Positions 1,407 to 33,374 of a DNA stretch of 64,000 nucleotides are shown piece by piece. Position 1 is the stretch's first letter, and the number at the start of each line of letters is the position of its first letter. Below the pieces are notes generated by a model. It ran no database searches. It was not told the DNA's origin and saw nothing but the letters and a program-made list of their open reading frames with translations. The translations under genes and the position numbers were made by a program. The DNA is from Convolutriloba macropyga (Eukaryota), in NCBI RefSeq assembly GCF_964194025.1, contig NC_134478.1:8866001-8930000 (forward strand), in the 5' to 3' direction.

Positions 1407-2770
1407 CAGTTTAGATAGCCGAATATCAGTTTAAGCACAATCGGTGACCGCTGCTGACGGTTATGCCTCTCATGCGCTTTGAGGTATTCAGGAAATTGCT
1501 GGCCGGTTATCGCGGCAAAGCCGCGGGGAAGCGCGCCCACCAACCCGCCAGTCGGAATTTTTTTTGCTTTGTATTCCAATTTGGCTAATTCCATAGCATG
1601 GTGTATTTTGTTCTATTCAGTTTAGCATAGTATGCGCATATGTGGAAAGTTTTCTGGGCATCTCTGATTGGTTAATAAATCACTCGCTTAAATTCTATTT
1701 AAGAATAGCCCTCTTTTTCAAAGAGAGTAAAATTGTTGAAAAGATCCTTTGGTTGCCCCAAATAACGTCAACAGTCAATCTTTCAGAAATTTATTGCCCT
1801 GACCGTGAAATTTTTGCGGAGAAATAAAAAGGCGGTAAAGTGCTGCGTAATCCATAGATCATTCTCCGCAGGTTTCTCAGATAATTTTGGTTGAGTGAGA
1901 TGAAAATCCTAAAGTTCTGTATAACCAACGATATGACGTTTGATCTTCCATACTTCCAATTCTTTGATCGCGTTCACCAAAAAAAAAATTTGAGGTAAAT
2001 ACTCTAAATCTTAATCGCTATTGAACACTGGTCCAACATAATTCAACCAATTGAACGTATTCAACGCGAAGCCATTTAACAAAATACTTCTCAGTTTTCA
2101 AAATACTGCTGAAATTTTAACTGCTAATTACAGCTGGTCTTCAAATCTTTTAAATCATAGACTACATACGTTTTAGTACTACATAAATTCCACAACCTCT
2201 ACTGTAAACAGTTTCAAATGCTTTTGTTGTAAATTACGTGCTCTATTCTACATGTAATAATCAGACTCCAGCCGGAAGGCAAATAATTCTTTTAGAAAAG
2301 GGACTGAAGTCGAAATTACGAGCTTGCCATTGTTGGAAAAACTAAACCACCCGAACTCTGAACATGTAGTCCTCCGTTCTTCTCATTAACCAGTTTATTG
2401 ACACGAAAAAGTTTATTTACTTATGAAAAATCCAAACCGATTTTCAGCTGGCATGTCATTCTAAACAAAAATCACCCGTTTTTTTCGCTTTAATATTTTC
2501 CAACCAGAAACTTGAATATTAGGTTTTTGAACAAGGTTAAGTTTTTAACAACATTAGGTTTTTGTCTCCTATCATTTACTTCTATAAAGCTAAATAGGCT
2601 TAGAGAAGAGCAGTTTAGTCCAGATAAAGTTAAACCTAATTTCCAGCTTCATTTGTTTATCAAACTATTTTTTTATTATTCAATCTCGACACTCATTTGC
2701 ATTTGCGTCATGATTTTTTGTGCTGAACCTGCTTGGAGCAATCAAACTGTTTTTCTGGACTACTCTTTCT

Positions 2771-2832
2771 GGGAATCGAACTTCTTATCTCCTGCAATTT
2801 TGTTGTCTCTTCCACGACTGTGCTACCATAGC
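2771..2832 (-). promoter_or_regulatory. tRNA-like A/B-box remnant related to the 10531 cassette
   Basis: Minus strand reads TAGCACAGTCGTGGAAGA...TGCAGGAGATAAGAAGTTCGATTCCC. Confidence 0.5.
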
Positions 2833-5744: not shown

Positions 5745-6226
5745 TCCTAGTCGAGATTCAAGTGAAAAATTGTTATGTTGTAAGATTTTGAAAGATGATT
5801 GGTTACCTTGCAAGATATTTGCAAGTTTGCGGCGGGTGAGCTCTGCTTTCATAGGTTGCTAGAGGCATATTATATTTCAGTTTGCGCAGAAATTTTCCCA
5901 GATATATTTGCGTGTGTAGATCTCCACAACTACATTTTTTAGCCTAAACTTTCGAAATTACACTGCTATTTCTTTCAAAAATTTTTATTAACACTGTAAT
6001 TATTTGTTATGATCAATTGCGTTCATATTTTCTCATTTCACTGTTTAAGTTAACATGTGCTATTTCTTTTAAAATATATTTTTGTTTTGCGCAGAAAAAT
6101 TGAAGTTGATATGGTTCGGACAAATTTCAATTATTTGCCTGTTTGCAAGATGAATGGTTACAAGATCTTGCAAGATTTTGCTAGGCGATGTATCATCTTG
6201 CAACATAACTTTTTGAAATCGACTTT
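5745..6226. mobile_element. Old MITE remnant related to the 22420 family
   Basis: Inverted AGTCGA...GTTATGTTG(T/C)AAGAT ends and CTTGCAAG repeats. A similar remnant lies at ~950-1050. Confidence 0.45.
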
Positions 6227-6399
6227 GTGAACTTCATTCAGTTTATTAGAAAAAGTACTCCCAGTTACTAAATACGCTGTAATGATATGCTATAATTTCT
6301 TAGTGGTGGGGGGGGGCTGTTGGGAATTAAGACAGATGTAACCAGTGCATTTAACTTTGCCTTTGAAGGTTTAAAAGATGTAAACGCTTTTGAAAATTC

Positions 6400-6554
6400 G
6401 TGTCTTTTCCATTATGCCCACCCCCAACCCCCCCCCCTCCCCACAAAATTATAGCCCCTCTCCCATTATGGTATGTTTATCATTATAGGGGGGAGGGGGG
6501 GGGGGGCGTAGGTTATCTGTCCACTAAGGTGGGGGGATATAATGGGAAAGAACC
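6400..6554. mobile_element. MITE, TIR GTGTCTTTTCCATTAT, 8-bp TSD GAAA(A/C)TTC
   Basis: Imperfect TIRs, with flanks 6392-6399 and 6555-6562 differing at one base. Homologous (inverted) to 49181-49332. Confidence 0.8.
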
Positions 6555-6603
6555 GAAACTTCCAGTAAACAATGTTAGCGTGTGCTTAATTGCGTATTTG
6601 AAG

Positions 6604-6909
6604 TTATGAGGGGCCAGAAACTGCCAAGAGCTCCTCTTTATTCTTTAGATGAAGTTGCAACTTTTGTCTGGCAGGCCACATTTCGCAAATCCATTCCTGG
6701 TCAACACACAAAACATTGGCTTTGAACCAATCGAAAGTCAACTCTTTCGTCACATTAACGTAAGAAAATATGACTATTTCTTCTTCGTATTTGCCCATCG
6801 GGGGTAAAATGTAGTCCAATTGTTGTATCCCGCCGTGTCTTTTAAAGCCACCAGTTCCGAAGCCCACTCTGATTATTTCGTTATAGCATAAGTGTTTATT
6901 GTATTCAGC
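6604..6909 (-). CDS. Candidate exon or pseudo-exon, unknown product
   Basis: Acceptor-like CGTCTTTTTAG|GCT at 6910/6909 extends the 87-aa ORF to 101 codons (AEYNKHLCYNEIIRVGFGTGG...SGPS*). Composition is protein-like but no domain was recognised. Confidence 0.3.
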   Translation of the reverse strand, partial: AEYNKHLCYNEIIRVGFGTGGFKRHGGIQQLDYILPPMGKYEEEIVIFSYVNVTKELTFDWFKANVLCVDQEWICEMWPARQKLQLHLKNKEELLAVSGPS

Positions 6910-6947
6910 CTAAAAAGACGATATGTCATAATTACAAATCAAAATTA

Positions 6948-7130
6948 GAATCTTTTCCGTTTGTGCCCCCCCCCGCTTAGTGGGTGCATAATATTTGCAT
7001 CCCCCAAGATGCACGTGCCATTTTTTTTACATAATGATTTACTATGTAATGGCACGTGCTCTGTAACTGAGGTGAGGGGCGCATAACGTACTGGAGGGGG
7101 GGGGGGGGGGGGGACAAACGGAAAAGATTC
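6948..7130. mobile_element. MITE, TIR GAATCTTTTCCGTTTGT, perfect 8-bp TSD CAAAATTA
   Basis: 17-bp TIR with identical flanks 6940-6947 and 7131-7138. A second copy lies inverted at ~33760-33942. Confidence 0.92.
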
Positions 7131-9899
7131 CAAAATTAATTAACAAAATCAGGGTTGAGATCCCCGACCATTATAATTTTTGATTAAAACACGGGGGGGG
7201 GATGCGCTTTAAATTAAAGGTTCTGGTTGTCCTTTTCAACGCATGAACTTCTGGACATTGGTCTGTCTGAATTGAGTCAGAGACTATTTGCAAAGCGCGA
7301 ATATCTGATCAGAAGCAACTTCGAGAGCACCAAAATCAAGAGCATTGAAGAGACTCAATAGGAGTCTGCTAGCTCTAGTCAGAACCAAGGGTTCCAACAG
7401 CTAAAAATAACTAGTCTCTTTTATAAAGAACGTTTATCTCTACACTCACGGCGTTATTATGACAAAACTTAAGACTTGATACAAGCGTGCCCAGTCTAAA
7501 AACTGACATGATCAGAGCTCTGATGCAGTACTGATTAAAGACTTGCAATAAGACGTTTTCAGTGCTGATTAAGACTTGGCGTTCAGTCCGGGATGTCAAC
7601 GTTCAACTATAGTGCGAGCAATTTGGAACAGTGACATATACAAAATATAAGATTAAAGTTTTAATCCTTTGTCTTTTGTTTTTGAAGTGCAAATTAGACT
7701 TGCTATTGAAAACAATTCCGCTTGACTGGATGTTTTGGCGCATAAACCAATCTTTAAGATACGAGAAAAGTATAAAAAAGTTTTGTCAAAATTTAACGTC
7801 ACTCTCTGATTATATGATTTCTAGCGTAACTGGGTATGGCCAGAAAAGATTTGGGCCGCGAGCGGGGCAAATCAAAATAAAAAAATTTATCGGGCTTTAC
7901 TTGGAGCTCGCGAAAGCAAGCAACATGGTCTGTTTTGTGTCTGATCTGTGGAGTTCCACAACCCAGGAAAGTCTGGTGAGAGGTAATTTTGAGTCCGCAT
8001 TAATCTTGACAGTAGTCTCGTTTCAGTCTGGGCTATGGCCACTCAAAAGTTTGTGCGCAATTCTTGATTGATTCATATCGGTGGTCCTGGACTTAATGTC
8101 AAGTCTCTATCAGTACTGATTCAATGAAAATGCAAGCCTTGGATGAGTACTGAATCAAAACTCTGATCATGTCACCTCTTAGAAGTGGCACGCATCGAAT
8201 CAAGTCTGAAGTCAAGGCTTGGCTTATCTTGGTCAAGTAATGGCCATGACTTGGTAAGTCTTGAGACAAGTCTTGGATACGAGTTTGTTATAGGCTTTCT
8301 TTTGTTTTGCAACTAAAGAAGAAGCCCCTATTTACAATGGCCTGCATTCAAAGCGTCCCAAAGTAAAAAAGAAGCACGAGAAAATGCGAGCACTTCCACA
8401 AAGTTTACTTGATTAGAATGAACGAATTTCTTATTCGCCTAAGTAGAGCAGTCATGGTCACTAATTTCTGCTCAATGAAATAAAAAAACGCTTTTTGAAT
8501 ATATAGGATACGTTTTAGGGTGATAGGTGCTCAAGTCAGAAACAGCTTATTCGGACTAACAAATTTTCGACCAGCTAAATTTGGAACGCATTAATTATAA
8601 ATAAAGTCTTCTTAATACTCAACCTCGGAGAGACCTCAAACTTGGGAGAAGTTTACGCATATTGATCTGTCTTGAACAATTTTTTGACAATCCTTTGAAT
8701 TGGGAAAATTAGTCTTCGAAGGTGAATTTTGTCGCACTATTATTATTATCAAACATTTCCGAATTTGGCCACTTGTTTTCCAAGAGCTTTGGTCAATAAA
8801 TTTTTTGGCACCCTTCGATCTAAACTAATGACCAAACTGCTTCAGGAAATCATGAAATGAACTCTGATAACTTTTTAACTGTTAATCAGGATATCATGTA
8901 TCTTGCAAAAAATATGTAAAACTGAGATTTAACAGAGCTTTGTGTTATTTAAAAAGATTCTCAGAAAAGAGTAACAAACGCTCTGTTGAACAAAACTATA
9001 TACATCCGGAAATGTTTTTCAGATATGATTGTTGGCTCTTTCCCATAAAAGTCGGCTAAGATTTCACAAAATTAAAAAAAAAAACTAATATTTCAATAAT
9101 GGCGACAATTGCAAACAATGTGCCTCAAACAAACAATTTCATTTCATATAGCACCTAAAATGATACTATATTTATGATAAAGTTAACATCCAGTTTTTAG
9201 AGTCACAACTTTGGTTTTGTTTCGAAACAAATTTCGAAATGTCTTTCAACCAACAAGCTTCAAAACTGTTTATTTAGTAGATCCCGAATTTATATTTCAG
9301 CTTTTGTTAATGGTTTAACACATAGTTTCCATGCAGCTGTGTTCTTAATCTCCCGATCATCTGCCGTTTAACCGATAGACAAAAAAGCAGAATTACAAAT
9401 GAACCTTTATAACGTAATTTATGTCTTTTCGGCTGGTTGGCTTAAATCAACTCTAATTACTTGAATGAGCTGTTTTGCTTAATAAAGTTAATCAATTTTT
9501 GGCGTACACGTGTCATTTCTGTCCAAATACCATTTAGATGTATTGAGTGCTATCGTCAATATAAAATAAAAATCTACATTCTTTTGAATTTTCTCTTGCT
9601 GGCTCGTTGAGATATAGAATTTAATTTAGTGGAACAGAAAGTGACCCTTAACCTCAAATCTGATAGAAAAAATATCAAGCATAGATTAAAGATGTGCTTT
9701 CTTTTGACTGTTCGGTTGACATGTCGTTTTGATGTATAATATAAGGTAGTGGACTGAATAACAACCAAAAACAGACTCCACATAAGGTGTTTATTTCTCT
9801 TAGATGTAAATTCCCTTATTAAGAACGGGAGAGGAGTATTGGAGAAGTGTATTATATCACATTTGTTCGAGTCCATTTTGGCGAAATAAATGAAACGCG

Positions 9900-10794
9900 C
9901 CCGGGTCGAGGTGTCACCGCCATTCAACGCAAAATTATGTAAGGTAAGCGGTTAATGCGGATATTTTTGTAAGATAAGCGGTGAATGCGGTGAAATTACG
10001 TAAATCAGGCGGTGAATGCGGTGAAAAAAAACTTTATCGGCTGGTAGCGCTGAAATTACATAATTTAACCGCTGAATTTAGCGGTGAAATTACATAAATT
10101 CACCGCTTCGAAAAAAAGTGTCCAAATTATGTAAGATAAGCGGTGAATGCGGTGAAATTACATAAATTCACCGCTCAACTTAGTGGTGAACTTACATAAA
10201 TTCACCTCTTAGAAAAAATTCTTAAAGATGTTTGAGATCAGCAAAGAATGTGGTGAAATTAATGGTGAGTGTGGGAGGAATTGTTAGATTTGCCTTCCCA
10301 CTAAAACTACCCCTTAATCTTACATCTTTTTGACACTTTTTCTAAGCGGTGAGTTTATGTAATTTCACCACTAAAGTAAGCGGTGAACTTACAAAAATTC
10401 ACCACATTTCACCGCTAAAATATGTAATTTCACCGCTAAAAATTGCAAATCTTACAAAAATTCACCGCGCATGTTTTGCAGAAAGTAGAGTGAATTCGAT
10501 TTATATTCAAACAAAAAATAATAGAATTTAGTGAGAGATGGCGCAGTGGAAGAAGAAGTGGAAGACATGCAGGAGGTGAGAGGTTCGGACCCTTGTAAGG
10601 GCGGTGAAATTACATATTTTAGCGGTGAATTGTGGTGAATTTTTGTAAGATCACCGCTTAGTCTAGCGGTGAACTTACATAATTTCACCGCATTCACCGC
10701 ATTTCACCGCAAAATTATGTATGAAATTTGCGGTGAAAAAACTAACTTTTCACCGCTTATCTTACATATTTTTGCATTTTTTTCTCGACCCGGG
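9900..10794. mobile_element. Non-autonomous DNA transposon, CCCGGGTCGAG TIRs, 2-bp TSD (CG), internal GCGGTGAA/TTCACCGC repeats
   Basis: Perfect 11-bp TIR with CG on both sides. The paralogous empty site at 11125-11145 (GAAACGCATGAGAAAT) confirms the boundaries. Confidence 0.92.
10531..10596 (+). promoter_or_regulatory. tRNA-like Pol III A/B-box cassette inside the 9900 MITE
   Basis: A box TGGCGCAGTGG (10539) and B box GGTTCGGACCC (10582). No complete cloverleaf. Confidence 0.6.
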
Positions 10795-13700
10795 CGTGAG
10801 AAATTTTGAAGTGGTTTGGGTGCTGAAGAGTTTTGAAGATTGGAGCAAAGAAATAGTGGCTTTCTATTCATACCACTGTTTTCAAGAGAGCGAGAAATTG
10901 AGATGTAAAAAATTTGTAAGACAGCAAAATCTTTGTTCACGAGAGGCTTTAAATAAACGGGTTATTGCATTTTTGATTTAGAGTTTGATTATGATAATTT
11001 TGATTTGTTGGGGTTGTTTTAGCGAGAAATTTCTCTTAGATGTAAATTCTTTTATTAAGAACGGGAGAGGAGTATTGGAGAAGTGAATTATATCACTTTT
11101 GTTCGAGTGCATTTTGGCGAAGGAAATGAAACGCATGAGAAATTTTGGAGTGGTTTGGGTGCTGAAGAGTTTTGAAGATTGGAGCAAAGAAAGAGTGGCT
11201 TTCTATTCATACCACTGTTTTCAAGAGAGCGAGAAATTGAGATGTAAAAAATTTGTAAGACAGCAAAATCTTTGTTCACGAGAGGCTTTATATAAACGGG
11301 TTTTTGCATTTTTTGATTTAGAGTTTGATTATGATAATGTAGATTGGATGGGGTTGTTTTGATAGTGGTTTGAGGGTTGTGCTTTGAGTTTTAGGCTTTT
11401 TTATATTTCAGTTTTTGTTATAATTCAACAGTGGTTTAAGTAGGCACCAGTTTTTTGAAGGGATTGTTATTTGTTTTCTTCGAAGATGTTGTGGAACTTC
11501 CGGCTAAGTGTTTATTTTTTTTTAAAAAATCGCTCTTTCACGAAGAGTTAAGAATGCCTTGGACTGTTCTTCAAAGTCATTTTTGTTCACGTATTTTAAC
11601 AATTGTTCGTAAATAATGCTGTCAAAAGCCTCTTCAGATGCTAATTTGCTTATTCAATTTTTTTTCAACGGCTAGAATCAGTGAAATTGGCGCATATTTT
11701 GTAGGATCTGATCACGTTATCATAATAAAAATTTGTCTCATTGTTGGTTAGATTTAGTCATTGTGCACGACGTATTGTTGTACAGACTGGTGATGTAAGA
11801 TTTCTAGTACTGAACAAAAATCAACAGATTTTCATAGGAAACAGGTTATTATGTTGTGACAAAACAAATAAAAATTCTTAATTCTGTTTGTTTTATTGAG
11901 GTCTACGAGTCCTTTTTTGTTTTGATGACCAGGAAGGATTTGCATCAAAACTATAAAAAGTTTTGGCATTGTTGCAGTTTTAGAAAGAAGCCCATTTTTG
12001 AGAATTTTACAGAAGTGTTAGAGGAGTTTTCCAAAGTTTGTTCAGTTAATGTAACTACGTAGGAGCTAGAAAGTTTCACATAATTATTCCAACTTTTGAT
12101 AGTGTTCGCAACGTAATAATCGAGTTTTGATTTTGTGTTTGCGCTTTCGCGTGTTGGAGCTACATTTTTCCAAAAAAACAACAACATAGCACAATTTATG
12201 GCGACAGGATCATTTAAAATAGTTGAAAAAATTGTAAAATTGTCAAGGAAACCATCCAAATTCATCTCTTGAAATCCAGGTCACTTTTAACTATTAAAAT
12301 TTTTACTCACGCTTTCTTTGTTTTCTCTGAAACTCACTGTTTTTTTTGTGAGAAATTGGAGATTGCCTATTTAGTTTAAAGCTAAACTTTTGTTAGTGAA
12401 GTTGCTATATATTTCGATGGTAAGCATTGTTGATGTATGTTAAGTGGGCGCATGTTTTGAAGGAGAATCTTTTGTTGATTTTAGGCCAAATTTCTGAAAG
12501 AATGTTTTGAAGCCGTGTTATTTGTTGAGGAAATTACAGCTGAGCATCTAATTTAGTTATCAAATTTTGCACTTTCGGAATTTTTGCATTGTCAGAAATT
12601 GACAAAGGAAGGTGCAAGCACAGACTAATTTGCAAAAAGAGAGACGATTAGAATGAAATTTTTCAGTTTTTGACCAATTACCCATTCAAAGTGTTATTGA
12701 TGATCTCCATCGTCCTTAGAACAATAGAAAGCTGAATAAGTTAACAATCATTCAAAACATAAACAAAACAGTTGATTCTATTCTCAAGTAATTTTTAATC
12801 AGTATTTGTTTGTTCTTATTTTGTTATCAACCATCAAATTTTCATACTTTTGGCAAGATTGTGATTTTCCCCGGACTCTTATGTCACCGTGTTTATCTTT
12901 CCTTCAAACCAAATAATAACAATTGTGAGTTGACGCAATCATGTCACGTTTTTGTTTGCTATAGCAATGCTAACTTGAACTTTTGAAAACGGGTTGTTGA
13001 GATTCTTGACTTTCTTCAATGTATGCGATCATTTCATATTTGCAGGCTCTATCTCTATGAATAAAATGGTTTATTTTTGTCGTTGAAAAATAGAAGTTTG
13101 CATATCACTAAAAATATTTGGATCGAGTTTCAAGATTTCGCTAAAAAATGCATGTTTTTCTGTTCTCATTGAAAATTTAATTTTCAAAATACGTTTCCTT
13201 TGCTGTGCGTCATCGTTGCCGCATTGTTGCAATTTCTCGTAGCGAAAGTATAAAGTTGATTTTTTACAAAATAGAATATTTCATTTGAACAACACTGTAG
13301 TACTTTTTTTGTTATTCCGCACAAGAAAAATCGAGATGACCGGAAAGAGAGGATTTTGACCGGAATGAGCGGATAATCATTGCAAAAAGATACACGCAAG
13401 GAGCGGAATTTTAGCGGAAGAAAGTGCAAGACATGAACGTTTAATTCCTGCCGTTTTGATTCCGTTCACGTTTAAGGGGTTTGAGCGGATTTTGATAAAC
13501 TATCCGCTCAAACAAATTCCGCTCGTTTCTTGCATTTTCCCCGCTCATTCCTCGACTAGTGGAATGAAGTAAATTCTAAAATTTCATCATAAGTTTACTT
13601 CATCTCTTACAAAAATTTGTTCGAATTCAGCAGTAAAAGATGCGTATAAAACATTCACCTAAATCTCTACTTCTTGGTGCAAACTTTACCCTGGCAAATA

Positions 13701-13926
13701 TTATTTGATGTAAAAATTCAACCTATTTAAAGCACCATTTAAAAAACTTAAGATATCAGTCTTGAATTAGATTCTGTAATTTAATCAAGTCGATCAAAGA
13801 TTGATTAAATTGGTTTTCATCAAAGATTATATATCCTTGATTGGAAAATCCCAGGACGAGGTTCGCGGCTCAAGTCATCTCTGTGCAGACCATCCAGACC
13901 AAAATCGGTTCTGATCAGTCAGACTT

Positions 13927-14105
13927 CAGTCGCGCAAATGGGGTGCCAGACCGGCTTTGGTTGCACACTGGAGGTGACAGAATGACTTGAGTTGCGCATC
14001 GGGGTGCCAGAACCGCTTGGGTTGCTCATTTGTGTTGCCAGATGCAATTGAGTCGCGCACTGCGGGTGCCAGCCCCACTTCGGTTGCGCACTGGGGGTAC
14101 CCTGA
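13927..14105 (+). repeat. ~31-bp tandem repeat (GTTGCGCACTGGGGGTGCCAG-like), ~6 diverged copies, inside a TCTGATCAG-repeat element
   Basis: Repeated TTGCGCA...GGTGCCAG core. A degenerate terminus CCCAGGACGAG lies at 13850. Confidence 0.65.
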
Positions 14106-14899
14106 CTGACCCTACCGACCATTCTTTGCAAAAAATTGGGAAGTGCTCCTCAAAAAGCAGTCCCTTGGGGGTTAAGTATCTTTTTTCGGGGGACTGTTCG
14201 TTTTTCGGATGGACCTCTTAGTTCTTAGTAGACGTTCCAGACTCTGGCAAGAGCTCTGTTCAGACTGTCCAGAATACACGACACAACTATACAGACCCTA
14301 GACCTCACCACGCTATGATCAGACTATCCAGACTCTGGACAAGTCTCATATCAGACTGTTCAGACCTTAGGTAGTGCTCTAATCAGATCGTGCAGACTCT
14401 GAATGGGGTCCTGATAAGACTCTCCAGACCGTAGATAGTGCTGCCAGACTCTGTGGAGCGGTCGCAGTTTGCACCCCGTGCGCGACCCAAGTCGCTTTGA
14501 TCAGGTCTGGCTTGAATTGCGCACCTCATCCTGAGTTTTAATGGTGCCCCAGTCTTCGAACGCGAAAGGTAAAAAACCAGCAGATCTTGGGAGGGTAAAG
14601 ATGTCATAACTTTTCTAACCACAATATAGTTGAGTTGTTTTTGAGGAGTACTCTGCAAATTGAAAGCCTCGTTTACATACTCAGTGGGCGAGAGGCCGTT
14701 AGCTTCACCATACTTCTGTAACCCACAACCATAAATAAAGGGCTCTTTTCAAATACAGTTTGTCATATTATCAAAATAATTGACGTTTTTAATTCACAAA
14801 AAAATGTGTAATTTTGAACTTAATCCTTTCTACTGAGGACGGTTTTTTCCTAGAAACAACGAAAACAGCTTAAGAAAATTTTGCCAACTAGGCGTACTA

Positions 14900-15630
14900 C
14901 CCGGGTTGAATTTTTCCGCCCAAAATGATGTAAGAGCGGGGCTGCAATGGGAGGATTTTTTAGGAAAATGCCGCTCAAAACTCTTACGTTTTTTTGGGCT
15001 GCATTGGGCTTCCAAGGGGGGGGGGTAAAATGGTGTAAGAGTGAGGGGGTAAAAGACAAATTAACCCCCCGCTCTTACATTATTTTTAGTCTGCCAAGGG
15101 GGGTAAAATGGTGTAAGAGTGAAGGGTTAAAAGACAAATTAACCCCTCACTCTTACATCTTTTTTGGTCTGCCAAGGGGGGTAAAATAGTGTAAGAGTGA
15201 GGGGGTAAAAGACAAATTAACCCCCCCCCCACTCTTACATCTTTTTTGGTCTGCCAAGGTGGGTAAAACGATGTAAGAGTTGGGGGGTAATTTGTATTTT
15301 ACCCCCTTACTCTTACACCATTTTATCCCCCTTGGAAGCACAATGCAGCCCAAAAAAACGTAAGAGTTTTGAGCTGCATTTTCCTAAAAAATCCTCCCAT
15401 TGCATCCCCACTCTTACGTCATTTTACCCCCCTTGGCAGCCCAACTCTTACATCATTTTACCCCCTCAATATTACCTTGTTTTAGCCCCCATACCGGAAG
15501 AATGCCAGTCTTGAACCCACAACCTCTTTATCCTCAGCTGCGTCGCCTTATCCTCCAGGCCATCGATGCTTGTCCAACTCTTGACGGTCTATATATATAA
15601 ATAATAATTGTTAGAAATGCCCCATCACAA
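14900..15630. mobile_element. Left part of a CCCGGG-type element (GTAAGAG/CTCTTAC repeats) whose right arm runs into satellite
   Basis: Starts CCCGGGTTGA. 14925-15030 is inverted at ~15320-15425. Homologous to 33139-33374. No right CCCGGG terminus was found. Confidence 0.8.
15503..15569 (-). promoter_or_regulatory. tRNA-like A/B-box cassette in the centre of the 14900 element
   Basis: Minus strand reads GCATCGA TGGCCTGGAGGATAAGGCG...GAGGTTGTGGGTTCAAGAC. Confidence 0.55.
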
Positions 15631-17710
15631 CAAATTACCCCCTCACTCTTACATCGTTTTACCCCCCTTGGCAGCCCAACTCTTACATCATTTTACCCCC
15701 TCTGAACAAATTACCCACTCACTCTTACACCATTTTACCCTCCTTGGCAGCCCAACTCTTACATCATATTACCCCCTCTGAACAGATTACCCCCTCACTC
15801 TTACACCATTTTACCCCCCTTGGCAGCCCAACTCTTACCTCATTTTACCCCCTCTGGACAAATTACCCCCTCACTCTTACACAATTTTACCACCCTTGGC
15901 AGCCCAATTCTTAAATCATCTGACCCCCTCTGAACAAGTTATCCCCTCACTCTTACACCATTTTAACGCCCTTGGCAGACAATTCTTACATCATTTTTCC
16001 CCCTCTTAACAAATTACCCCCTCACTCTTACACCATTTAACCTCCTTGGCAGCCCAACTCTTACATAATTTTACCCCCTCTGAACAAATTACCCCTCATT
16101 CTTACACCATTTTACCCCCCTTGGCAGCCCAAATCTTACCTCATTCTACCCCCTCTGGACAAATTAACCCCTCACTCTTACACAATTTTACCCCCTTGGC
16201 AGCCCAATTCGTACATCATTTTACCCCCTCTGAACAAGTTATCCCCTCACTCTTACACCATTTTACCCCCTTGGCAGCCCAACTCTTACATCATTTTACC
16301 CCCTCTGAACAAATTACTCCCTCACTCTTACACCATTTTACCCCCCTTGGCAGCCCAACTCTTACCTCAATTTAACCCCTCTGGACAAATTACCCTCTCA
16401 CTCTTACACAATTTTTCCCCCCTTGGCAGCCCAACTCTTACATCATTTTACCCCCTCTGAACAAATTACCCCCTCACTCTTACACCATTTTACCCCCCTT
16501 GGCAGCCGAACTCTTACATCATTTTACCCCCTCTGAACAAATTAACCCCTCACTCTTACACCTTTTTACCCCCCTTGGCAGCCCAACTCTTACCTCATTT
16601 TACCCCCTCTAGACAAATTACCACCTCACTCTTACACAATTTTACCCCCCTTGGCAGCCCAAATCTTACATCATTTTAACCCCTCTGAACAAATTACCCC
16701 CTCACTCTTACACCATTTTACCCCCCTTGGCAGCCCAACACTTACCTAATTTTAACCCTCTGGACAATTTACCCCCTCACTCTTACACCATTTTACCCCC
16801 AATCGCAGCCCAACTCTTACCTCATTTTACCCCCTCTGGACAAATTACCCCCTCACTCTTACACCATTTTAACCCCCTTGGCAGCCCAATTCCTACATCA
16901 TTTTGCCCCCTCTGAACAAATTACCCCCTCACTCTTACACCATTTTACCCCCCTTGGCAGCCCAACTCTTACATCATTTTATCCCCTCTGAACAATTTAC
17001 CCCCTCACTCTTACAACATTTTACCCCCCTTGGCAGCCCAACTCTTACCTCATTTTACCCCCTCTGGACAAATTACCCCCTCACTCTCACACCATTTTAC
17101 CCCCCTTGGCAGCCCAACTCTTACCTCATTTTACCCCCTCTGGACAAAATACCCCCTCACTCTTACACAATTTTACCCCCTTGGCAGCCCAATTCTTACA
17201 TCATTTTACCCCCTCTGAAAAATTTACCCCCTCACTCTTACACCATTTTACCCCCCTTGGCAGCCCAACACCTACCTCATTTTACCCCTCTGGACAAATT
17301 ACCCCCTCACTCTTACACCATTTTACCCCCCTTGGCAGCCCAACTCTTACCTCATTTTACCCCCTATGAACAAATTACCCCCTCACTCCTACACCATTTT
17401 ACCCCCTTGGCAGCCCAACTCTTACATCATTTTACCCCACGTGAACAAAATACCCCCTCACTCTTACACCATTTTACCCCCCTTGGCAGCCCAATTCTTA
17501 CATCATTTTACCCCCTCTGAACAACATACCCCCTCACTCTTACACCATTTTACCCCCCTTGGCAGCCCAACTCTTACATCATTTTACCCCCTCTGAACAA
17601 ATTACCCCCTCACTCTTACACCATTTTACCCCCCTTGGCAGCCCAACTCTTACCTCATTTTACCCTCTCTGGACAAATTACCCCCTCGCTCTTACACCAT
17701 TTTACCCCCC
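15630..17710 (+). repeat. Satellite A, ~76-bp unit, ~27 copies
   Basis: Unit AAATTACCCCCTCACTCTTACACCATTTTACCCCCCTTGGCAGCCCAACTCTTACATCATTTTACCCCCTCTGAAC. Period 76 (15701, 15777, 15853). Confidence 0.97.
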
Positions 17711-20700
17711 ATTGCAGCCCACTCTTACATGGCAATTTCAGTCAGGGGATGTAATTCCTTAAAAGCCCTCCCATTGAAGCTCATTGCAGCCCACTCTTAC
17801 AGGACAATTTCAGTCAGGGGGGTAATTCCTTAAAAGTCCTCCCATTGCAGCCCATTGCAGCCCACTCTTACATGGCAATTTCAGTCATGGGGGGTAATTC
17901 CTTAATAGTCCTCCCATTGCAGCCCATTTCAGCCCACTCTTACATGACAATTTCAGCCATGGGGGGTAATTCCTGAAAACTCCTCCCATTGCAGCCCATT
18001 GCAGCCCACTCTTATATGGCAATTTAAGTCAGGGGGGTAATTCCTTAAAACTCCTCCCATTGCAGCCCATTGCAGCCCACTCTTACATGACAATTTCAGT
18101 CATGGGGGGTAATTCCTGAAAACTCCTCCCATTGCAGCCCATTGCAGCCCACTCTTACATGGCAATTTCAGTCAGGGGGGTAATTCCTTAAAAGTCCTCC
18201 CATTGTAACCCATTGCAGCCAACTCTTACATGGAAATTTCAGTCAGAGGGTAATTCCTTAAATGTCCTCCCATTGCAGCCCATTGCAGCCCACTCTTACA
18301 TGACAATTTCAGTCATCGTGGTAATTCTTTAAAAGTCCTCCCATTGCAGCCCATTGCAGCCCACTCTTACATGACAATTTCAGTCATGGGGGGTAATTCC
18401 TGAAAACTCCTCCCATTGCAGCCCATTGCAGCCCACTCTTAAATGGCAATTTCAGTCAGGGGTTAATTCCTGAAAAGTCCTCCCATTGCAGCCCATTGCA
18501 GCCCACTCTTACATGACAATTTGAGTCATGGGGGGTAAGTCCTGAAAACTCCTGCCATTGCAGCCCATCGCAGCCCACTCTTACATGGCAATTTAAGTCA
18601 GGGGGGGTAATTCCTTAAAACTCCTGCCATTGCAGCCCATTGCAGCCCACTCTTACATGGCAATTTCAGTCATGGGGGTAATTCCTTAAAAGTCCATCCA
18701 TTGCAGCCCATTGCAGCGCACTCTTACATGACAACTTCAGTCATTGGGGATTATTTCCTGAAAACTCATCCCATTGCAGCCCATTGCAGCCCACTCTTAC
18801 ATGGCAATTTCAGTCAGTGGGGGTAATTCCTTAAAAGTCCTCCCATTGCAGCCCATTGCAGCCAACTGTTACATGGCAATTTCAGTCAGGGGGGTAATTC
18901 CTTAAAAGTCCTTCCATTGCAGCCCATTGCAGCCCACTCATACATGGCAATTTCAGTCATGGGGGTAATTCCTTAAAAGTCCTCCCATTGCAGCCCATTT
19001 CAGCCCACTCTTACATGACAATTTCAGCCATGGGGGGTAATTCCTGAAAACTCCTCCCATTGCAGCCCATTGCAGCCCACTCTTATATGGCAATTTAAGT
19101 CAGGGGTAATTCCTTAAAACTCCTCCCATTGCAGCCCATTGCAGCCCATTCTTACATGGCAATTTCAGTCATGGGGGGTAATTCCTTAAAAGTCCTCCCA
19201 TTGCAGCCCATTGCAGCCCACTCTTACATGACAATTTCAGTCATGGGGGGTAATTCCTGAAAACTCCTCCCATTGCAGCCCATTGCAGCCCACTCTTAAA
19301 CGGTAATTTCAGTCAGGGGGGTAATTCCTGAAAAGTCCTCCCATTGCAGACCATTGCAGCCCACTCTTACATGACAATTTCAGTCATGGGGGGTAAGTCC
19401 TGAAAACTCCTCCCATTGCAGCCCATTGCAGCCCACTCTTACATGACAATTTCAGTCATGGGGGGTAATTCCTTAAAAGTCCTCCCATTGCAGCCCATTG
19501 CAGCCCACTCTTACATGACCATTTCAGTCATGGGGGGTAATTCCTGAAAACTCCTCCCATTGCAGCCCTTTGCAGCCCACTCTTAAATGGCAATTTCAGT
19601 CAGTGGGGGTAATTCCTTAAAACTCCTCCCATTGCAGCCCATTGCAGCCCACTCTTACATGGCAATTTAAGTCAGGGGGGGTAATTCCTTAAAACTCCTG
19701 CCATTGCAGCCCATTGCAGCCCACTCTTACATGGCAATTTCAGTCATGGGGGTAATTCCTTAAAAGTCCATCCATTGCAGCCCATTGCAGCGCACTCTTA
19801 CATGACAACTTCAGTCATTGGGGATTATTTCCTGAAAACTCATCCCATTGCAGCCCATTGCAGCCCACTCTTACATGGCAATTTCAGTCAGTGGGGGTAA
19901 TTCCTTAAAAGTCCTCCCATTGCAGCCCATTGCAGCCAACTGTTACATGGCAATTTCAGTCAGGGGGGTAATTCCTTAAAAGTCCTTCCATTGCAGCCCA
20001 TTGCAGCCCACTCATACATGGCAATTTCAGTCATGGGGGTAATTCCTTAAAAGTCCTCCCATTGCAGCCCATTTCAGCCCACTCTTACATGACAATTTCA
20101 GCCATGGGGGGTAATTCCTGAAAACTCCTCCCATTGCAGCCCATTGCAGCCCACTCTTATATGGCAATTTAAGTCAGGGGTAATTCCTTAAAACTCCTCC
20201 CATTGCAGCCCATTGCAGCCCATTCTTACATGGCAATTTCAGTCATGGGGGGTAATTCCTTAAAAGTCCTCCCATTGCAGCCCATTGCAGCCCACTCTTA
20301 CATGACAATTTCAGTCATGGGGGGTAATTCCTGAAAACTCCTCCCATTGCAGCCCATTGCAGCCCACTCTTAAACGGTAATTTCAGTCAGGGGGGTAATT
20401 CCTGAAAAGTCCTCCCATTGCAGACCATTGCAGCCCACTCTTACATGACAATTTCAGTCATGGGGGGTAAGTCCTGAAAACTCCTCCCATTGCAGCCCAT
20501 TGCAGCCCACTCTTACATGACAATTTCAGTCATGGGGGGTAATTCCTTAAAAGTCCTCCCATTGCAGCCCATTGCAGCCCACTCTTACATGACCATTTCA
20601 GTCATGGGGGGTAATTCCTGAAAACTCCTCCCATTGCAGCCCTTTGCAGCCCACTCTTAAATGGCAATTTCAGTCAGGGGGGGTAATTCCTGAAAATTCT

Positions 20701-21105
20701 TCCCATTGCAGCCCACTCTTACATGGCAATTTCAGTCATGGGGGGTAATTCCTTAAAAGTCCTCCCATTGCAGCCCATTGCAGCCCAGTCTTACATGGCA
20801 ATTTCACCCAAGGGGGATAATTCCTTAAAAGTCCTCCCATTGCAGCCCATTGCAGCCAACTCTTACATGGCAATTTCAGTCAGGGGGGGGGGGGGTAATT
20901 CCTTAAATCCCTCCCATTGCAGCCCATTGCAGCCCACTCTTACATGACAATTTCAGTCATGGGGGGTAATTCCTGAAAACTCCTCCCATTGCAGCCCATT
21001 GCAGCCCACTCTTAAATGGCAATTTCAGTCAGGGGGGTAATTCCTGAAAAGTCCTCCCATTGCAGTCCATTGCAGCCCACTCTTACATGGCAATTTCAGT
21101 CAATT
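17710..21105 (+). repeat. Satellite B, ~71-72-bp unit, ~47 copies, with a 1074-bp higher-order duplication
   Basis: Unit CCATTGCAGCCCATTGCAGCCCACTCTTACATGGCAATTTCAGTCATGGGGGGTAATTCCTTAAAAGTCCTC. Diagnostic variants recur at offset 1074 (18691/19765, 19301/20375, 19517/20591). Confidence 0.97.
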
Positions 21106-22419
21106 TCACTAATATGGCTCAAAGTTTTCGTCATATTTTAAAACAGAAACCCTAAATCTCCACAAAAATGACCGAAATCAACAGAAAACCATAAAACCTG
21201 ATCTCACGATGCAAACAACTAATCGATGATTACGCCAACTTCTTGTGCAAACTGCATTGGTGTTGTTACTTTCTCAGATTGGATCCGTTATAATTATTTC
21301 GCGTTTATATTATAGTTTTTGATTCGAGGAAAAATGCTGTAAAATTGTATTTATGTTTTGGTCTCATCTATCTACAATAGTGATAATTTTTTTTCATAAC
21401 ACTTTTTTCTGCATGAGTGTAATGCGAGAACAAAATACCGCATCCGATGTTCATTGCATTTTGTCCCAACTATTTAACAGAAACAATTTTAAAAAAGCTG
21501 CTAAAAAATTGGACCTTGGCGTAAACATAATGGTGTCAGTGGAAAATTTGTTTGATAGTTTTTAAATACTTGAAACTAAAAGTTGTGAGATTTTAAAGAC
21601 TAAAATTCAACAAGAAAAAATAATTTTTACAGTGAAATGTACATCAAGTTTTCAGCAGCAAAACAAAATTTGCTATGTAAGTTTGTTCCTAACAAAAATA
21701 CTGAAGAACTTCCTTTGGACTTCACAAAAAACTCAAGAGCTTCGTGGGCATGATTTTTTTTCTAAAAATAAAACGTGTACGGTCTCATATCATAGACGAT
21801 GTGCTTAGTCTAAAACGAACTGACCATATTGAAACTTCTGACTGATTTGACGAAGGCAAATATTTGCTTTTGACGAGTGATCTATGGCCTAAGCGTTCAT
21901 AGAAAATGTACTCTTTAAACTGAAACAATAAAACCATAATTCGTAGGAACATTTAATAGCCGACAATTTTTTTTTGAAATTAAAGGAACAAATTCAACTT
22001 ACGGCCTTGAAACACTTGTTTTGGGATTTTCTGACAGTTGCTCAAATGAAATACTTCAACTTTTTTATTATAAAAAATTTTGTGTCGACTTCCACCAAAC
22101 TAGTGTTGTAATGAGGGTTGGAGGTGGATTAGAGTGGATTAGAGGAGGATGGGAATTTGAGGCGATATAATGCTCTTCATCAGAAAAAGGCTTGATTTGA
22201 TATTGATGGTGGAAAAGATAATAAGTATTACATTACGTTGCAATTACCACCCAATTCAATTAAAAGTCGAGCCGATTGGCTCCCTGGAAATTGTTTCAAA
22301 ATCCTAGAACTTTTTTTATAAAATGTTTTTAACCACTGCTCCAACGATTCAGTTCAGAAGTCACATTTTGTTAGGAGCCACTTAAATTGTAAAAATTACT
22401 TCAAAATTTTTCCAATAAA

Positions 22420-23366
22420 CCCGGGTCGAGGCCAAATGGTTATCTTGTAAGAACTTGCAAGTTTCTGGCAGAAACTTACAAGGCGATCCATCGCCTTGCA
22501 AGTTTTTCTTCCAAAAACCTGCAAGTTCTTACAAGTTATCCAATCGACTTGCAAGTTCTTACAAGTTAACCATTCGACTTACAAGGCTCTTACAAGTTAA
22601 CCATTCAACTTACAAGTTACTTACNNNNNNNNNNNNNNNNNNNNNNNNNNNNNNNNNNNNNNNNNNNNNNNNNNNNNNNNNNNNNNNNNNNNNNNNNNNN
22701 NNNNNNNNNNNNNNNNNNNNNNNNNNNNNNNNNNNNNNNNNNNNNNNNNNNNNNNNNNNNNNNNNNNNNNNNNNNNNNNNAAAACGTTGCAAGACAGGAA
22801 TGGAAACGGATGTTTGGAAAAAAAAGAATCAATCTGGAAAAGTGTGAATTAAATTACAAAAAGGGTATGAAAATTAAGGGCCACTAAATAATTTTGAGGA
22901 AATACTGACATATGAATTTGAAAATTCAATCAAAGTCAATATTTTGGCAACATTTTTATAAAAAAGTGATCATGAAGAAGCTAATTGAGATCTACAGTTT
23001 TTTAACGGAATTGCAAAAGGAACTCTCTTGAATTGATAAAATTCAAAAAGTAACCATTTTATCTACTTAGGTCGAATTGTATTATGTTATCCAAACAGAG
23101 CAACTAACTCCCGCGCGCTTTCTACGCAAAATGACTGAATGTTAAATTGAATTAACCAATAAGACTTGTGCTCAACCGGAACGAACTTGCAAGAAACTTA
23201 CAAATTAGCCATTCGCCTTACAAGTTCTTACAAGTTAATCATTCGACTTACAAGTTCTTACAAGTTAACCATCTTTTGCAAGAAACTTGCAAAATCTTAC
23301 AAGTTAACCATCTTTTGCAAGAAACTTGCAAGTTCTTACAAGTTAACCATTCGGTCTCGACCCGGG
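22420..23366. mobile_element. Non-autonomous DNA transposon, ~50-bp TIR starting CCCGGGTCGAG, 2-bp TSD (AA), CTTACAAG/CTTGCAAG subterminal repeats
   Basis: Left end CCCGGGTCGAGGCCAAATGGTTATCTTGTAAGAACTTGCAAG matches the reverse complement of the right end. AA flanks both ends. The element spans an N gap. Confidence 0.88.
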
Positions 23367-24519
23367 AATCCAGAACCATTCGTCCTCTGGGTGGAACTAT
23401 TTTCTCGCATTTTAACCCAAAACAGCCACGTCTAGAATTTTTTTGTCAAAGTGTACTTTGGTACCATGTATTAAACGCGAGGACCTTGGACGATATTTTT
23501 TCTGTCAAATTCTGACATCTTTGGTGTTCGCATATCAAACAAAAAGTGAAACCTAAATGTAAAGTATGTACTTTTGAAAAAAAATGAGCACGATGTTTTA
23601 AGGTGACGCAAGATCACGACCTTTGGGGTGAACAAGGTTGGTTGCCGGTACAACACTTCAGCCCATAAAGATAAGGAAGACAACGATCTTCCCCCAAAAT
23701 GTCAGAATTTCTTTTAAAAATGAATAAATTGCTGTGAATGTGGTGACTCGTTTAAAGAATTGCAATTTTTAGCATGAAACGCGATGAGAGAGGTAAAATG
23801 AAGCTTTCACCGCTACAAAACCCACAAACCGTACAAAAATTAACCGGAAAAAAATCACAGCAAAATTGTTGGCGTTCAATTTTTTCATCGTCTAGGCTTC
23901 AAAATTTTCACTGCTAAAAGCCTGTAACCCTACTGCCACCACTTAAAAAACGATTTCGAACGAAAACAATTGGTGTTTGAAATGAGCCCTGATAAATTTG
24001 GAATTGATATTTGCAGCAGCCTCCACTCTTGTCAAGAGTATACCAGTTGAGCAAAGTGTAGAATGGTTTCAACACTCGGGTGAACTCTTTCTCATCTGTG
24101 CTGTTGGGTGGTCTATCAATTATTGCCAGCAATGATCGAGGGTTACCCATCAAACCCATGAAACAAAAGTAGTCACTGAAACAATTGTTGACTAACTTTT
24201 TATAACTATTTTACAGAACGTACCTGCCTATAGACAAGTGCACGCTATAGATTATATATTGTAAATAGTAGACTATTGCAATCTATTGCAGTTTTCTGCT
24301 TCTCGACAATCGTTAATAGTTTCATATTAGAATCGTTTCAATCCATTATCATGTCTATGCTTCGAAACAGTTGTTTAATACGCACTAACATACGAAGAGA
24401 CAAAGCAAAGTACAGCTATGAAAAACTGACATTGAGATTTCTCTATTGTAATATTTTGCTCTAAGTGATCGAGTTCTTTTGCTTGCCAACTCATAATCAC
24501 AGCACTCATTACGAATATA

Positions 24520-33138: not shown

Positions 33139-33374
33139 CCCGGGTCTTACAACAAATTCCACCCATTTTGTTGTAAGAGTGGGGAAGAGGTAGATTGATG
33201 TAAGAGTGAGGGGGTAATTTATCTTTTACCCCCTCACTCGTACATCATTTTAATCCCCTCGACAGGCCATTGAATCCCAAAGAGATTTAGGAGCTTTGAG
33301 CTGCATTTCCTTAAAGAATCCTCCCCTTGCAGCCCCACTCTTACATCTTTTTGGGCGAAAAAAATCGACCCGGG
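33139..33374. mobile_element. Short CCCGGGTC-terminated MITE, 2-bp TSD (TG), same family as the 14900 element
   Basis: TG|CCCGGGTC...GACCCGGG|TG. The reverse complement of its right ~110 bp aligns to 14900-15010. Confidence 0.85.

What the first reader, a model, noticed from the sequence alone, without database searches (positions are those of the whole stretch)
14900..21105. A transposon arm caught turning into a two-part satellite
Seen: the element starting at CCCGGG 14900 has a normal left arm, but its right arm is 5.5 kb of tandem repeat. Satellite A (76 bp) is built from the inner CTCTTACANCATTTTACCCC repeats. Satellite B (72 bp) matches the terminus-proximal segment (TTCCT.AAAA.TCCTCCCATTGCA.CCCACTCTTAC, compare 15381-15418 and ~33307-33345). 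The A-then-B order is colinear with an unexpanded right arm, and the compact relative at 33139-33374 shows the ancestral form. Inference: this is MITE-to-satellite birth, with the right terminus lost or unassembled.
Basis: partly seen in the sequence, partly recalled or inferred. Interest (0 to 1): 0.75.

Follow-up and report, generated by a model that had tools for sequence, protein, structure and literature searches.

The report
Truncated transposon carrying two satellite arrays
This stretch is one right-end-truncated copy of an abundant non-coding cut-and-paste transposon of the acoel worm Convolutriloba macropyga that carries two satellite-like arrays built from its own end-repeats, a known kind of transposon-to-satellite link, not a satellite being born at this spot.

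Summary
The sequence observation holds. A CCCGGG-ended element starts at 14900. A 76-bp array (A) lies at 15629-17707 and a 72-bp array (B) at 17708-21102. Both match sub-repeats of the element's arms.

The "caught in the act" reading does not hold. The same order recurs on many chromosomes: left end, foldback, spacer, A array, B array, then a conserved ~150-bp right end finishing in TCGACCCGGG. Dispersed copies share identical internal junctions, have unique flanks and mostly carry 2-bp target duplications of variable sequence, not TA. Every sampled A or B array whose border I could read sits inside such an element.

A diverged paralogous segment shows the empty site for this insertion. The window copy has lost its right end; B stops mid-monomer at 21102. 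Local growth is real but secondary: one 1074-bp block of B is duplicated at 99.5% identity.

The closest known case is the Tetris foldback of Drosophila virilis and other repeat-bearing MITEs, so this is a new member of a known kind. The transposase partner and superfamily are unresolved.

The scan noted related elements in this genome before (s1-244616, s1-234632).

The parts
14898..14899 (.). TA dinucleotide flanking the left end. It is the left copy of the expected 2-bp target duplication; the right copy is lost.
   Evidence: The paralogous empty site reads ...TACTA|AAAC....
14900..15019 (+). Left terminus and left arm. It starts CCCGGGTTGAAT and contains TGTAAGAG and the reverse complement of the B core.
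   Evidence: The first 37 nt are identical in 9 of the 13 other left ends found. The first 95 nt differ by 3.8% on average between 14 copies.
15020..15290 (+). Inner 78-bp repeats x3.4 of the foldback. Each unit is itself an inverted pair of ~38-nt sub-repeats.
15296..15425 (+). Unexpanded right arm of the foldback. It lacks the last 22 nt, including CCCGGG.
   Evidence: pair I1, 14922-15020 with 15327-15425, 95% complementary. The same truncation is seen in most copies (right arms end at query position 204-214 of 236).
15426..15470 (+). Partial A-type unit joining the arm to the spacer.
15471..15628 (+). Family-specific spacer, unrelated to the repeats, ending in a (TA)n run. Its minus strand has a B-box-like GGTTCAAGAC. 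ARAGORN calls no tRNA.
   Evidence: The same segment and both junctions occur in 8 dispersed copies. No tRNA was called and there was no Rfam match inside the spacer.
15629..17707 (+). Array A: 76-bp units (two ~38-nt sub-repeats, each with CTCTTACA and a C run), about 27 copies.
17708..21102 (+). Array B: 72-bp units, about 47 copies. It ends mid-monomer at 21102.
   Evidence: The type-1 A-to-B junction is shared with L003, L014 and L015.
18570..20717 (+). Recent tandem duplication of a 1074-bp (15-monomer) block inside B: 18570-19643 and 19644-20717.
   Evidence: 1069 of 1074 positions are identical, against about 92% at one- or two-monomer shifts.
21103..21215 (.). Unique flank directly after the truncated B array. 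It is homologous to the paralogous segment next to the empty site.
   Evidence: Unitigs of X2, X3 and X5 run from 21074 through 21900 with 0 differences.
33139..33374 (+). Compact related element with CCCGGG at both ends, flanked by TG/TG.
9900..10794 (+). Element of another family with the same CCCGGGTCGAGG ends, flanked by CG/CG.
22420..23366 (+). Element of a third family with the same ends, flanked by AA/AA. The paralogous segment holds its empty site.

Best explanation
Window 14900-21102 is one copy of a multi-copy, non-coding, cut-and-paste (TIR) transposon family of Convolutriloba macropyga.

The standard architecture of the family is:
- a left terminus (CCCGGGTTGAAT...);
- a small foldback;
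- a 158-bp spacer;
- array A (76 bp);
- array B (72 bp);
- about 150 bp of right end finishing in ...ACATTCGACCCGGG.

Shown:
- Whole composites, arrays included, have inserted at many sites with 2-bp target duplications.
- This copy inserted after a local segmental duplication and later lost its right end.
- Arrays vary from about 0.1 to over 20 kb between copies.
- Arrays still change in place, as the 1074-bp block duplication shows.

Inferred:
- A and B arose once (or a few times) in a master element by tandem amplification of its own subterminal repeats, which carry the hexamer CTTACA.
- That hexamer, shared by all CCCGGG-ended families, is the likely binding site of a transposase supplied in trans.
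- Unequal exchange or replication slippage lengthens and shortens the arrays.
- Loss of an end, as here, strands an array as ordinary dispersed satellite-like DNA.
For: 1. Recurrence. Probes for each part give the same order and relative strand in the window and in more than 25 loci on many chromosomes.

2. Right terminus. Ten loci align up to ...TTCGACCCGGG and diverge immediately after it. A search with the right end gave 1668 first-look candidates, and the scored ones lie next to B arrays.

3. Target duplications. Five of seven complete copies have matching 2-bp flanks: L007 AC, L019 TT, L028 TG, L030 TG, L032 AG. So do all three other CCCGGG elements in the window: CG, AA, TG.

4. Empty sites. 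The paralogous segment C11:8353418-8360787 (81% identical) lacks the composite exactly at 14899|14900. It also lacks the 22420-23366 element, with AA single instead of doubled.

5. Shared internal junctions.

6. Monomer diversity. Within-array diversity roughly equals between-locus diversity (A 0.059 vs 0.065; B 0.071 vs 0.077). Nearest neighbours are still enriched within a locus (48% and 45%, against 8% and 7% expected), which points to an inherited array plus local duplication.

7. Homology of A and B to the arms.

8. CTTACA/TGTAAG occurs 10-19 times per kb in every CCCGGG-ended element, against 0.40 per kb in the rest of the window. In A and B it always has the right-end orientation.

9. 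No coding capacity. The only long ORFs are periodic translations of array A.
Against: - Two of seven complete copies have non-matching flanks: L008 CA/TA and L018 AG/CT.
- No autonomous partner or transposase was found, so mobilisation in trans and the role of CTTACA are inferences.
- The direction (arm repeat to satellite, rather than satellite captured by the element) rests on within-genome arguments only; no related species could be searched.
- Only about 30 loci were sampled, and the own-genome search scores 40 candidates per query, so copy numbers and the absence of element-free arrays are not established.
- Several arrays end in unrelated DNA without a terminus (L009, L013, L016, L020).
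- The unitig support for the 21102 junction has 29 nt on the repeat side, below the tool's 31-nt rule, and probably comes from the assembly's own project.
Confidence: 0.85

Rival explanations
1. One reading: an ordinary MITE inserted here, and its right arm is expanding into two satellites at this locus.
For: - Arm-to-monomer homology.
- A 1074-bp block of B duplicated at 99.5% identity shows ongoing local growth.
- Nearest-neighbour monomers are enriched within a locus.
Against: - The same spacer, A-to-B junction and array order occur in copies on other chromosomes.
- Complete copies keep a conserved right end beyond B.
- The window's monomers differ by 7.5-8.4%, as much as monomers from different loci and more than the termini differ between copies.
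- The unexpanded right arm is still present at 15296-15425.
Confidence: 0.03
2. Capture: A and/or B were pre-existing satellites of the genome that a CCCGGG-ended element picked up. Its arm sub-repeats would then derive from the satellite, as was proposed for the Xenopus MITE miDNA4.
For: - The direction cannot be read from one genome.
- Some arrays lack a terminus on one side.
- The review PMC12628747 describes such a capture model for miDNA4.
Against: - The core of every monomer is the CTTACA hexamer, which is also repeated subterminally in CCCGGG-ended families with unrelated interiors (9900-10794, 22420-23366). The motif therefore looks like a trait of the transposon group.
- Its orientation in A and B is uniformly that of the right end.
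- All sampled arrays with readable borders lie inside elements.
- Short forms with only about 3 B units or no A exist (L028, L018, L019, L030).
Confidence: 0.1
3. Assembly artefact: the arrays, their junction or the missing right end come from collapse or mis-joining of repeats.
For: - There is an N gap 1.5 kb downstream, inside another element (22625-22780).
- The 99.5% identical 1074-bp blocks could be an assembly duplication.
- The assembly is larger than the k-mer size estimate (1176 vs 867 Mb, PMC13650328).
Against: - The assembly is from PacBio HiFi reads of ~10-kb fragments, longer than the 5.5-kb arrays.
- The same architecture is assembled independently at dozens of loci.
- Short-read unitigs from two samples match 21074-21900 exactly.
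- The flank after 21102 is the sequence expected from the paralogous empty site.
Confidence: 0.02

Closest known systems
Tetris, a foldback transposon of Drosophila virilis with TIR-220 internal tandem repeats (Dias et al. 2014, PMC4079207)
   Same: Both are non-autonomous and foldback-like. Both share only the outermost part of their ends with other MITE families of the same genome. Internal tandem repeats of the arms occur both inside elements and as kb-size satellite-like arrays, and rearranged forms are many (abstract read).
   Different: - Here there are two different arrays (76 and 72 bp) in a fixed order on one side only, between a small complete foldback and a distinct right end.
- The monomers are much shorter than 220 bp.
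- The target duplication is 2 bp.
- So far the arrays appear to stay inside elements rather than forming separate heterochromatic blocks (not tested by cytology).
Tandem-repeat-bearing MITEs: Xstir and miDNA4 of Xenopus, DTC84 of the clam Donax trunculus (reviewed in PMC12628747)
   Same: These are MITEs whose interior holds a variable number of satellite-like monomers. MITE, composite and array forms coexist. The model is that longer internal arrays become plain satellites once the ends decay.
   Different: - miDNA4 is Tc1/mariner-type, and capture of a pre-existing repeat was proposed for it.
- Here the monomers share sequence and a group-wide motif with the element's own ends.
- Here the duplication is a non-specific 2 bp.
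Satellite-like arrays carried by Helentron-derived non-autonomous elements in the Pacific oyster (PMC7492417)
   Same: Short satellite-like arrays are dispersed genome-wide because a mobile element carries them (title and abstract).
   Different: Those are rolling-circle elements without TIRs or target duplications. The present family has TIRs and target duplications.
Subterminal repeat regions of CACTA/En-Spm (CMC) transposons
   Same: Short motifs repeated many times inside both ends, in opposite orientation at the two ends. CMC duplications are 2-4 bp according to PMC4482050. That the subterminal motifs bind the transposase in En/Spm is from my own knowledge.
   Different: The termini here read CCCGGGT(C/T)GA, not CACTA. 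No CMC transposase was linked to these elements, so membership was not tested.

Membership tests
Non-autonomous TIR (cut-and-paste) DNA transposon / MITE-like element | Terminal inverted repeats at both ends | tested here: met
   Complete copies begin with CCCGGGTTGAAT and end with ATTCGACCCGGG. The window copy has only the left one.
Non-autonomous TIR (cut-and-paste) DNA transposon / MITE-like element | Target site duplication of fixed length | tested here: met
   The duplication is 2 bp. Flanks match in 5 of 7 complete copies of this family and in 3 of 3 other CCCGGG elements. An empty site shows AA doubled for 22420-23366.
Non-autonomous TIR (cut-and-paste) DNA transposon / MITE-like element | Many dispersed copies with unrelated flanks, and an empty site | tested here: met
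   for the dispersed copies. The paralogous empty site for this very insertion lies at 14899|14900.
Non-autonomous TIR (cut-and-paste) DNA transposon / MITE-like element | No transposase gene of its own; an autonomous partner with the same ends exists | tested here: inconclusive
   There is no gene inside; the ORFs are repeat translations. No partner was found in the ~300 kb held or in earlier notes.
Foldback elements (FB, Tetris-like) | Long inverted arms built of tandem sub-repeats that reach both termini | tested here: not met
   Positions 14900-15425 form a foldback (99-nt arms, 95%). Its right arm stops 22 nt short of a terminus. The true right end lies beyond the arrays and shares only about 12 nt plus the TGTAAGA motif with the left end. 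The element is foldback-containing, not a classical foldback.
Classical satellite DNA | Head-to-tail arrays of a monomer | tested here: met
Classical satellite DNA | Long blocks (tens of kb to Mb), typically heterochromatic or centromeric | tested here: inconclusive
   Sampled arrays are 0.1-22 kb and dispersed on all large scaffolds. There was no full census and no cytology.
ISL2EU group (PHIS superfamily) | 2-bp duplication that is specifically AT, target A|AT|T (PMC4482050) | tested here: not met
   The duplications seen are AC, TT, TG, TG, AG, CG, AA, TG. The rule was read.
Tc1/mariner-derived (Stowaway-like) MITE | TA target duplication | tested here: not met
   Only some flanks are TA. 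The matched pairs are not TA.
CMC (CACTA/Mirage/Chapaev) superfamily | 2-4-bp duplication, CACTA-type termini, CMC transposase | tested here: inconclusive
   The duplication length fits. The termini are CCCGGG, not CACTA. No transposase was tested.

The most novel reading that the evidence does not exclude
The CCCGGGT(C/T)GA-ended elements have a non-specific 2-bp duplication and CTTACA subterminal repeats. They may belong to a transposon lineage not yet described, or to an unusual CMC branch. The A and B arrays would then be hyper-expanded arrays of its transposase-binding site. Such arrays could change the element's own mobility or soak up transposase, rather than being inert by-products.
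Probability: 0.15. Interest if true: 0.55.

Novelty: new member of a known kind. Interest (0 to 1): 0.33.

Why it matters
It gives a clean, sequence-level example, in a phylum (Xenacoelomorpha) where repeats are undescribed, of how a transposon spreads satellite-like DNA. The genome note PMC13650328 does not mention satellites or transposons.

The whole series is visible in one genome:
- short forms with a few monomers;
- standard composites;
- copies with arrays over 20 kb;
- copies that have lost an end.

For annotation, A and B should be masked as parts of one transposon family, not as independent satellites. The fixed junctions give markers for subfamilies. The shared CTTACA motif gives a testable candidate for the binding site of the still unknown transposase.

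Tried and rejected
- **Higher-order repeats.** Tandem Repeats Finder also reported periods of 303 and 143. Monomer similarity at lags 1-8 shows no periodicity in the window or in other loci, so I dropped higher-order structure, apart from the single 1074-bp block duplication.
- **tRNA or SINE identity of the spacer.** ARAGORN found nothing in 9800-24000. Rfam gave only sub-threshold microRNA-like hairpin matches on the foldback. I call the segment a spacer with a B-box-like word only.
- **Autonomous partner.** No ORF-bearing CCCGGG-bounded element lies in the window or in the 39 loci. Earlier notes gave no partner.
- **ISL2EU.** Considered because of the 2-bp duplication and rejected on target specificity. 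Two further literature searches for 2-bp-duplication superfamilies gave nothing usable.
- **Continuation loci.** Several long copies are therefore known from one end only.
- **Right end elsewhere in the window.** A fuzzy search of all 64 kb found no right-end sequence.
- **Depth from read laying.** Summed word depth on B is about 10^4 times that of the unique flank. The tool states that this is not a copy number, so I use it only as a sign of abundance.
Full report
**Source**

The window is G000:C11:8866001-8930000 of a 1,175,981,408-base assembly. This size equals the 1,175.98 Mb of the published chromosomal assembly of the acoel Convolutriloba macropyga, which was made from PacBio HiFi reads of ~10-kb fragments. 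That paper mentions neither satellites nor transposons (PMC13650328).

**What is in the window**

Tandem Repeats Finder reports three repeats:
- a 78-bp repeat x3.4 at 15020-15290;
- a 76-bp array x27.8 at 15629-17730 (A);
- a 72-bp array x47.5 at 17708-21102 (B).

G+C rises to 0.45-0.47, and the GC skew of A is -0.67.

Reading the sequence gives this order:
1. flank ...GTACTA;
2. CCCGGGTTGAAT at 14900 and a left arm to about 15019;
3. the 78-bp inner repeats;
4. a right arm at 15296-15425;
5. a partial A unit;
6. a 158-bp segment unrelated to the repeats, ending in (TA)n (15471-15628);
7. array A;
8. array B, which stops in mid-monomer at 21102 and abuts unique DNA.

The arms 14922-15020 and 15327-15425 are 95% complementary over 99 nt. 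So 14900-15425 is a small foldback that lacks only the last 22 nt of its right end.

**Relation of the monomers to the arms**

A is a pair of ~38-nt sub-repeats, each with CTCTTACA followed by a C run. Its first 45 nt match the inner arm at 41/45. The core of B matches the outer arm, with a 9-10-nt duplication of CCCATTGCAG. The scores lie 10-20 standard deviations above 500 shuffles.

**The same composite is repeated across the genome**

Own-genome searches gave these first-look candidate counts:

| Query | Candidates |
|---|---|
| 33139 element | 877 |
| A | 2329 |
| B | 1456 |
| Right end | 1668 |

These counts are not copy numbers.

I fetched 20 loci of 10 kb and 12 of 3 kb, and marked each part with BLAST probes. 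Wherever the borders are readable, the order and relative strand are the same: left end, foldback, spacer, A, B.

Beyond B, ten loci align perfectly through about 150 nt that end in ...GGACATTCGACCCGGG. They become unrelated immediately after it. This is the right terminus that the window copy lacks.

Of the 11 loci chosen only because they hit A or B (L010-L020), ten have an element terminus on the expected side. The eleventh (L012) is array from end to end.

Array lengths vary widely:
- A ranges from absent to about 22 kb (C7:6.47 Mb, L002 and L003).
- B ranges from about 0.1 to over 6 kb.

Short forms exist:
- L028 is 496 bp with three B units.
- L018 and L019 lack A.
- L030 lacks B.

Some copies have repeated blocks: spacer plus A (L001), or A-B-A-B (L022, L023).

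**Evidence that the composite moves as a unit**

1. *Target duplications.* Complete copies L007, L019, L028, L030 and L032 have matching dinucleotides on both sides (AC, TT, TG, TG, AG). L008 (CA/TA) and L018 (AG/CT) do not. The three other CCCGGG-ended elements in the window are flanked by CG/CG, AA/AA and TG/TG. That is eight of ten, against roughly one in twelve expected by chance.

2. *Empty sites.* The flanks of the window element have one diverged (81%) inverted paralogue about 530 kb away, which I rebuilt from L038, L039 and L034.
   - There the sequence runs ...GCTTACTA|AAAC... without the element.
   - About 110 nt later it resumes homology with window 21118 onward.
   - The same paralogue lacks the 22420-23366 element, and AA is present once instead of twice.

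3. *Shared internal junctions.*
   - The arm-to-spacer and spacer-to-A joins are the same in eight copies on different scaffolds, differing mainly in (TA)n length.
   - The A-to-B join has two types. One is shared by the window, L003, L014 and L015 (near-identical in L008 and L009). The other is shared by L017, L025, L026 and L027.
   - The B-to-right-end join is the same in ten copies.

**Age relations**

- Non-array parts differ between copies by medians of 4.2% (left end), 2.0% (right end) and 5.5% (spacer).
- Monomers within the window's own arrays differ by 7.5% (A) and 8.4% (B). Within-array and between-locus distances are nearly equal overall (A 0.059 vs 0.065; B 0.071 vs 0.077).
- A monomer's nearest neighbour lies in its own locus 48% (A) and 45% (B) of the time, against 8% and 7% expected.

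I read this as arrays that were already heterogeneous when the copies dispersed, with later local duplication on top. No higher-order periodicity is present. One recent local event is visible in the window: a 1074-bp block (18570-19643) repeated at 19644-20717 with 1069/1074 identity, against about 92% at monomer shifts.

**State of the window copy**

No right-end sequence occurs anywhere in the 64 kb. The DNA after 21102 is single-copy apart from the paralogue. It corresponds to the DNA beside the empty site. The loss therefore removed the right end and, at most, a short stretch of flank. The exact amount is unclear, because the paralogue has about 95 extra bases there and the alignment is poor.

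The word ATTTCA occurs both in the B monomer and at the start of the flank. A microhomology-mediated deletion is therefore possible, but this is inference.

Logan unitigs of 1208 nt in three runs from two samples match 21074-21900 without a difference. They carry only 29 nt of B, under the tool's 31-nt bridging rule, and probably come from the same project as the assembly. This is weak support against mis-assembly.

One-end-truncated arrays are not rare in the sample (L009, L013, L016, L020). The left border of the 22-kb array in L002 is an assembly gap.

**Direction of origin**

The hexamer CTTACA/TGTAAG occurs 10-19 times per kb in the foldback, in A, in B, in 33139-33374 and in the two CCCGGG-ended elements with unrelated interiors. 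It occurs 0.40 times per kb in the remaining 54.8 kb of the window. In A and B it is always in the right-end orientation.

A motif shared by families that otherwise share only their ~12-nt termini looks like a property of the transposon group, most simply the binding site of its transposase. This favours monomers derived from the element rather than a captured foreign satellite. It remains an inference within one genome.

**Superfamily**

The superfamily is unresolved:
- The duplication is 2 bp but not the AT of ISL2EU (PMC4482050).
- It is not the TA of Tc1/mariner.
- CMC elements have 2-4-bp duplications (same paper) and, from my own knowledge, subterminal repeats. However, the termini here are not CACTA, and I could not link any transposase.

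**Comparison with known cases**

- Tetris of Drosophila virilis is a non-autonomous foldback. It shares only its outermost ends with another MITE, and the internal 220-bp repeats of its arms also form kb-size arrays (PMC4079207).
- Xstir, miDNA4 and DTC84 are MITEs with variable internal arrays. The model that such arrays become plain satellites after the ends decay has been published (PMC12628747).
- Oyster Helentron derivatives spread satellite-like arrays in a similar way (PMC7492417).

The present family differs in four respects: it carries two different arrays in a fixed order on one side; it has a distinct right end; its duplication is 2 bp; and the host is new. These are differences of detail, so I rate it a new member of a known kind.

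**Earlier notes of this scan**

The scan flagged related material on other DNA of this genome:
- elements sharing CCCGGG(T/C)CGAGG termini with unrelated minisatellite interiors (s1-244616);
- a 10-kb satellite inside a TIR/foldback transposon (s1-234632);
- abundant non-coding transposons with a tRNA-derived piece (s1-198644, s1-229368);
- foldback mini-transposons with shared ends (s1-214639).

My results agree with the first directly. I did not test the others, beyond finding that ARAGORN calls no tRNA in the spacer.

**Verdict**

Interest is modest.

Noticed in passing
window 12500-24144 and 33139-33374 versus G000:C11:8342297-8360787 (L034, L038, L039): There is an inverted, diverged segmental duplication about 530 kb away. 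Identity is mostly 72-84% over 12500-21947, rising to 90-95% from 22100. Each copy has its own later insertions, so it supplies empty sites for two transposon insertions in the window. The paralogue itself carries an insertion holding a 22420-type element (paralogue positions 2356-3837).
   Followed up: partly
window 9900-10794, 22420-23366, 33139-33374, 14900-21102: All CCCGGG-ended elements, whatever their interior, are 25-47 times enriched for the hexamer CTTACA/TGTAAG (10-19 per kb against 0.40 per kb). This is a candidate shared transposase-binding motif.
   Followed up: partly
L001 (G000:C6:40836000-40845999) 4268-10000: In this copy the unit 'spacer plus a short A array' is itself repeated five times (spacers at 4815, 5778, 6123, 7141, 8156). 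Part of the foldback is also repeated. This is amplification at a larger scale than the monomer.
   Followed up: no
L022 and L023 (G000:C5:20.06 Mb and 48.57 Mb): These copies carry alternating A-B-A-B blocks, with a partial right-end-like piece between them. This suggests tandem duplication or unequal exchange between A-B units.
   Followed up: no
window 14132-14536: The DNA just left of the element belongs to another dispersed repeat family. It gave 556 first-look candidates, with 72-83% identity over ~400 nt.
   Followed up: no
L007 2765-2776 and about 30 nt after 6569: The 12 nt left of this copy (TATCACAAGTAC) recur about 30 nt downstream of its right end, beyond the AC duplication. This may be a local repeat of the target region; it is unexplained.
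   Followed up: no
window 53269-53996 and 55330-55960: Other tandem repeats are present: ~180-bp and 157-bp units in AT-rich DNA, and a 69-bp x7 repeat at 99% identity next to a 33-bp x4.8 repeat in a G+C-richer stretch. The latter lies inside the region another reader flagged as a NIDO/FN3 repeat protein gene.
   Followed up: no
window 22625-22780: An assembly gap (156 N) lies inside the 22420-23366 element, within its 30-31-bp subterminal repeats. I did not fill or examine it.
   Followed up: no
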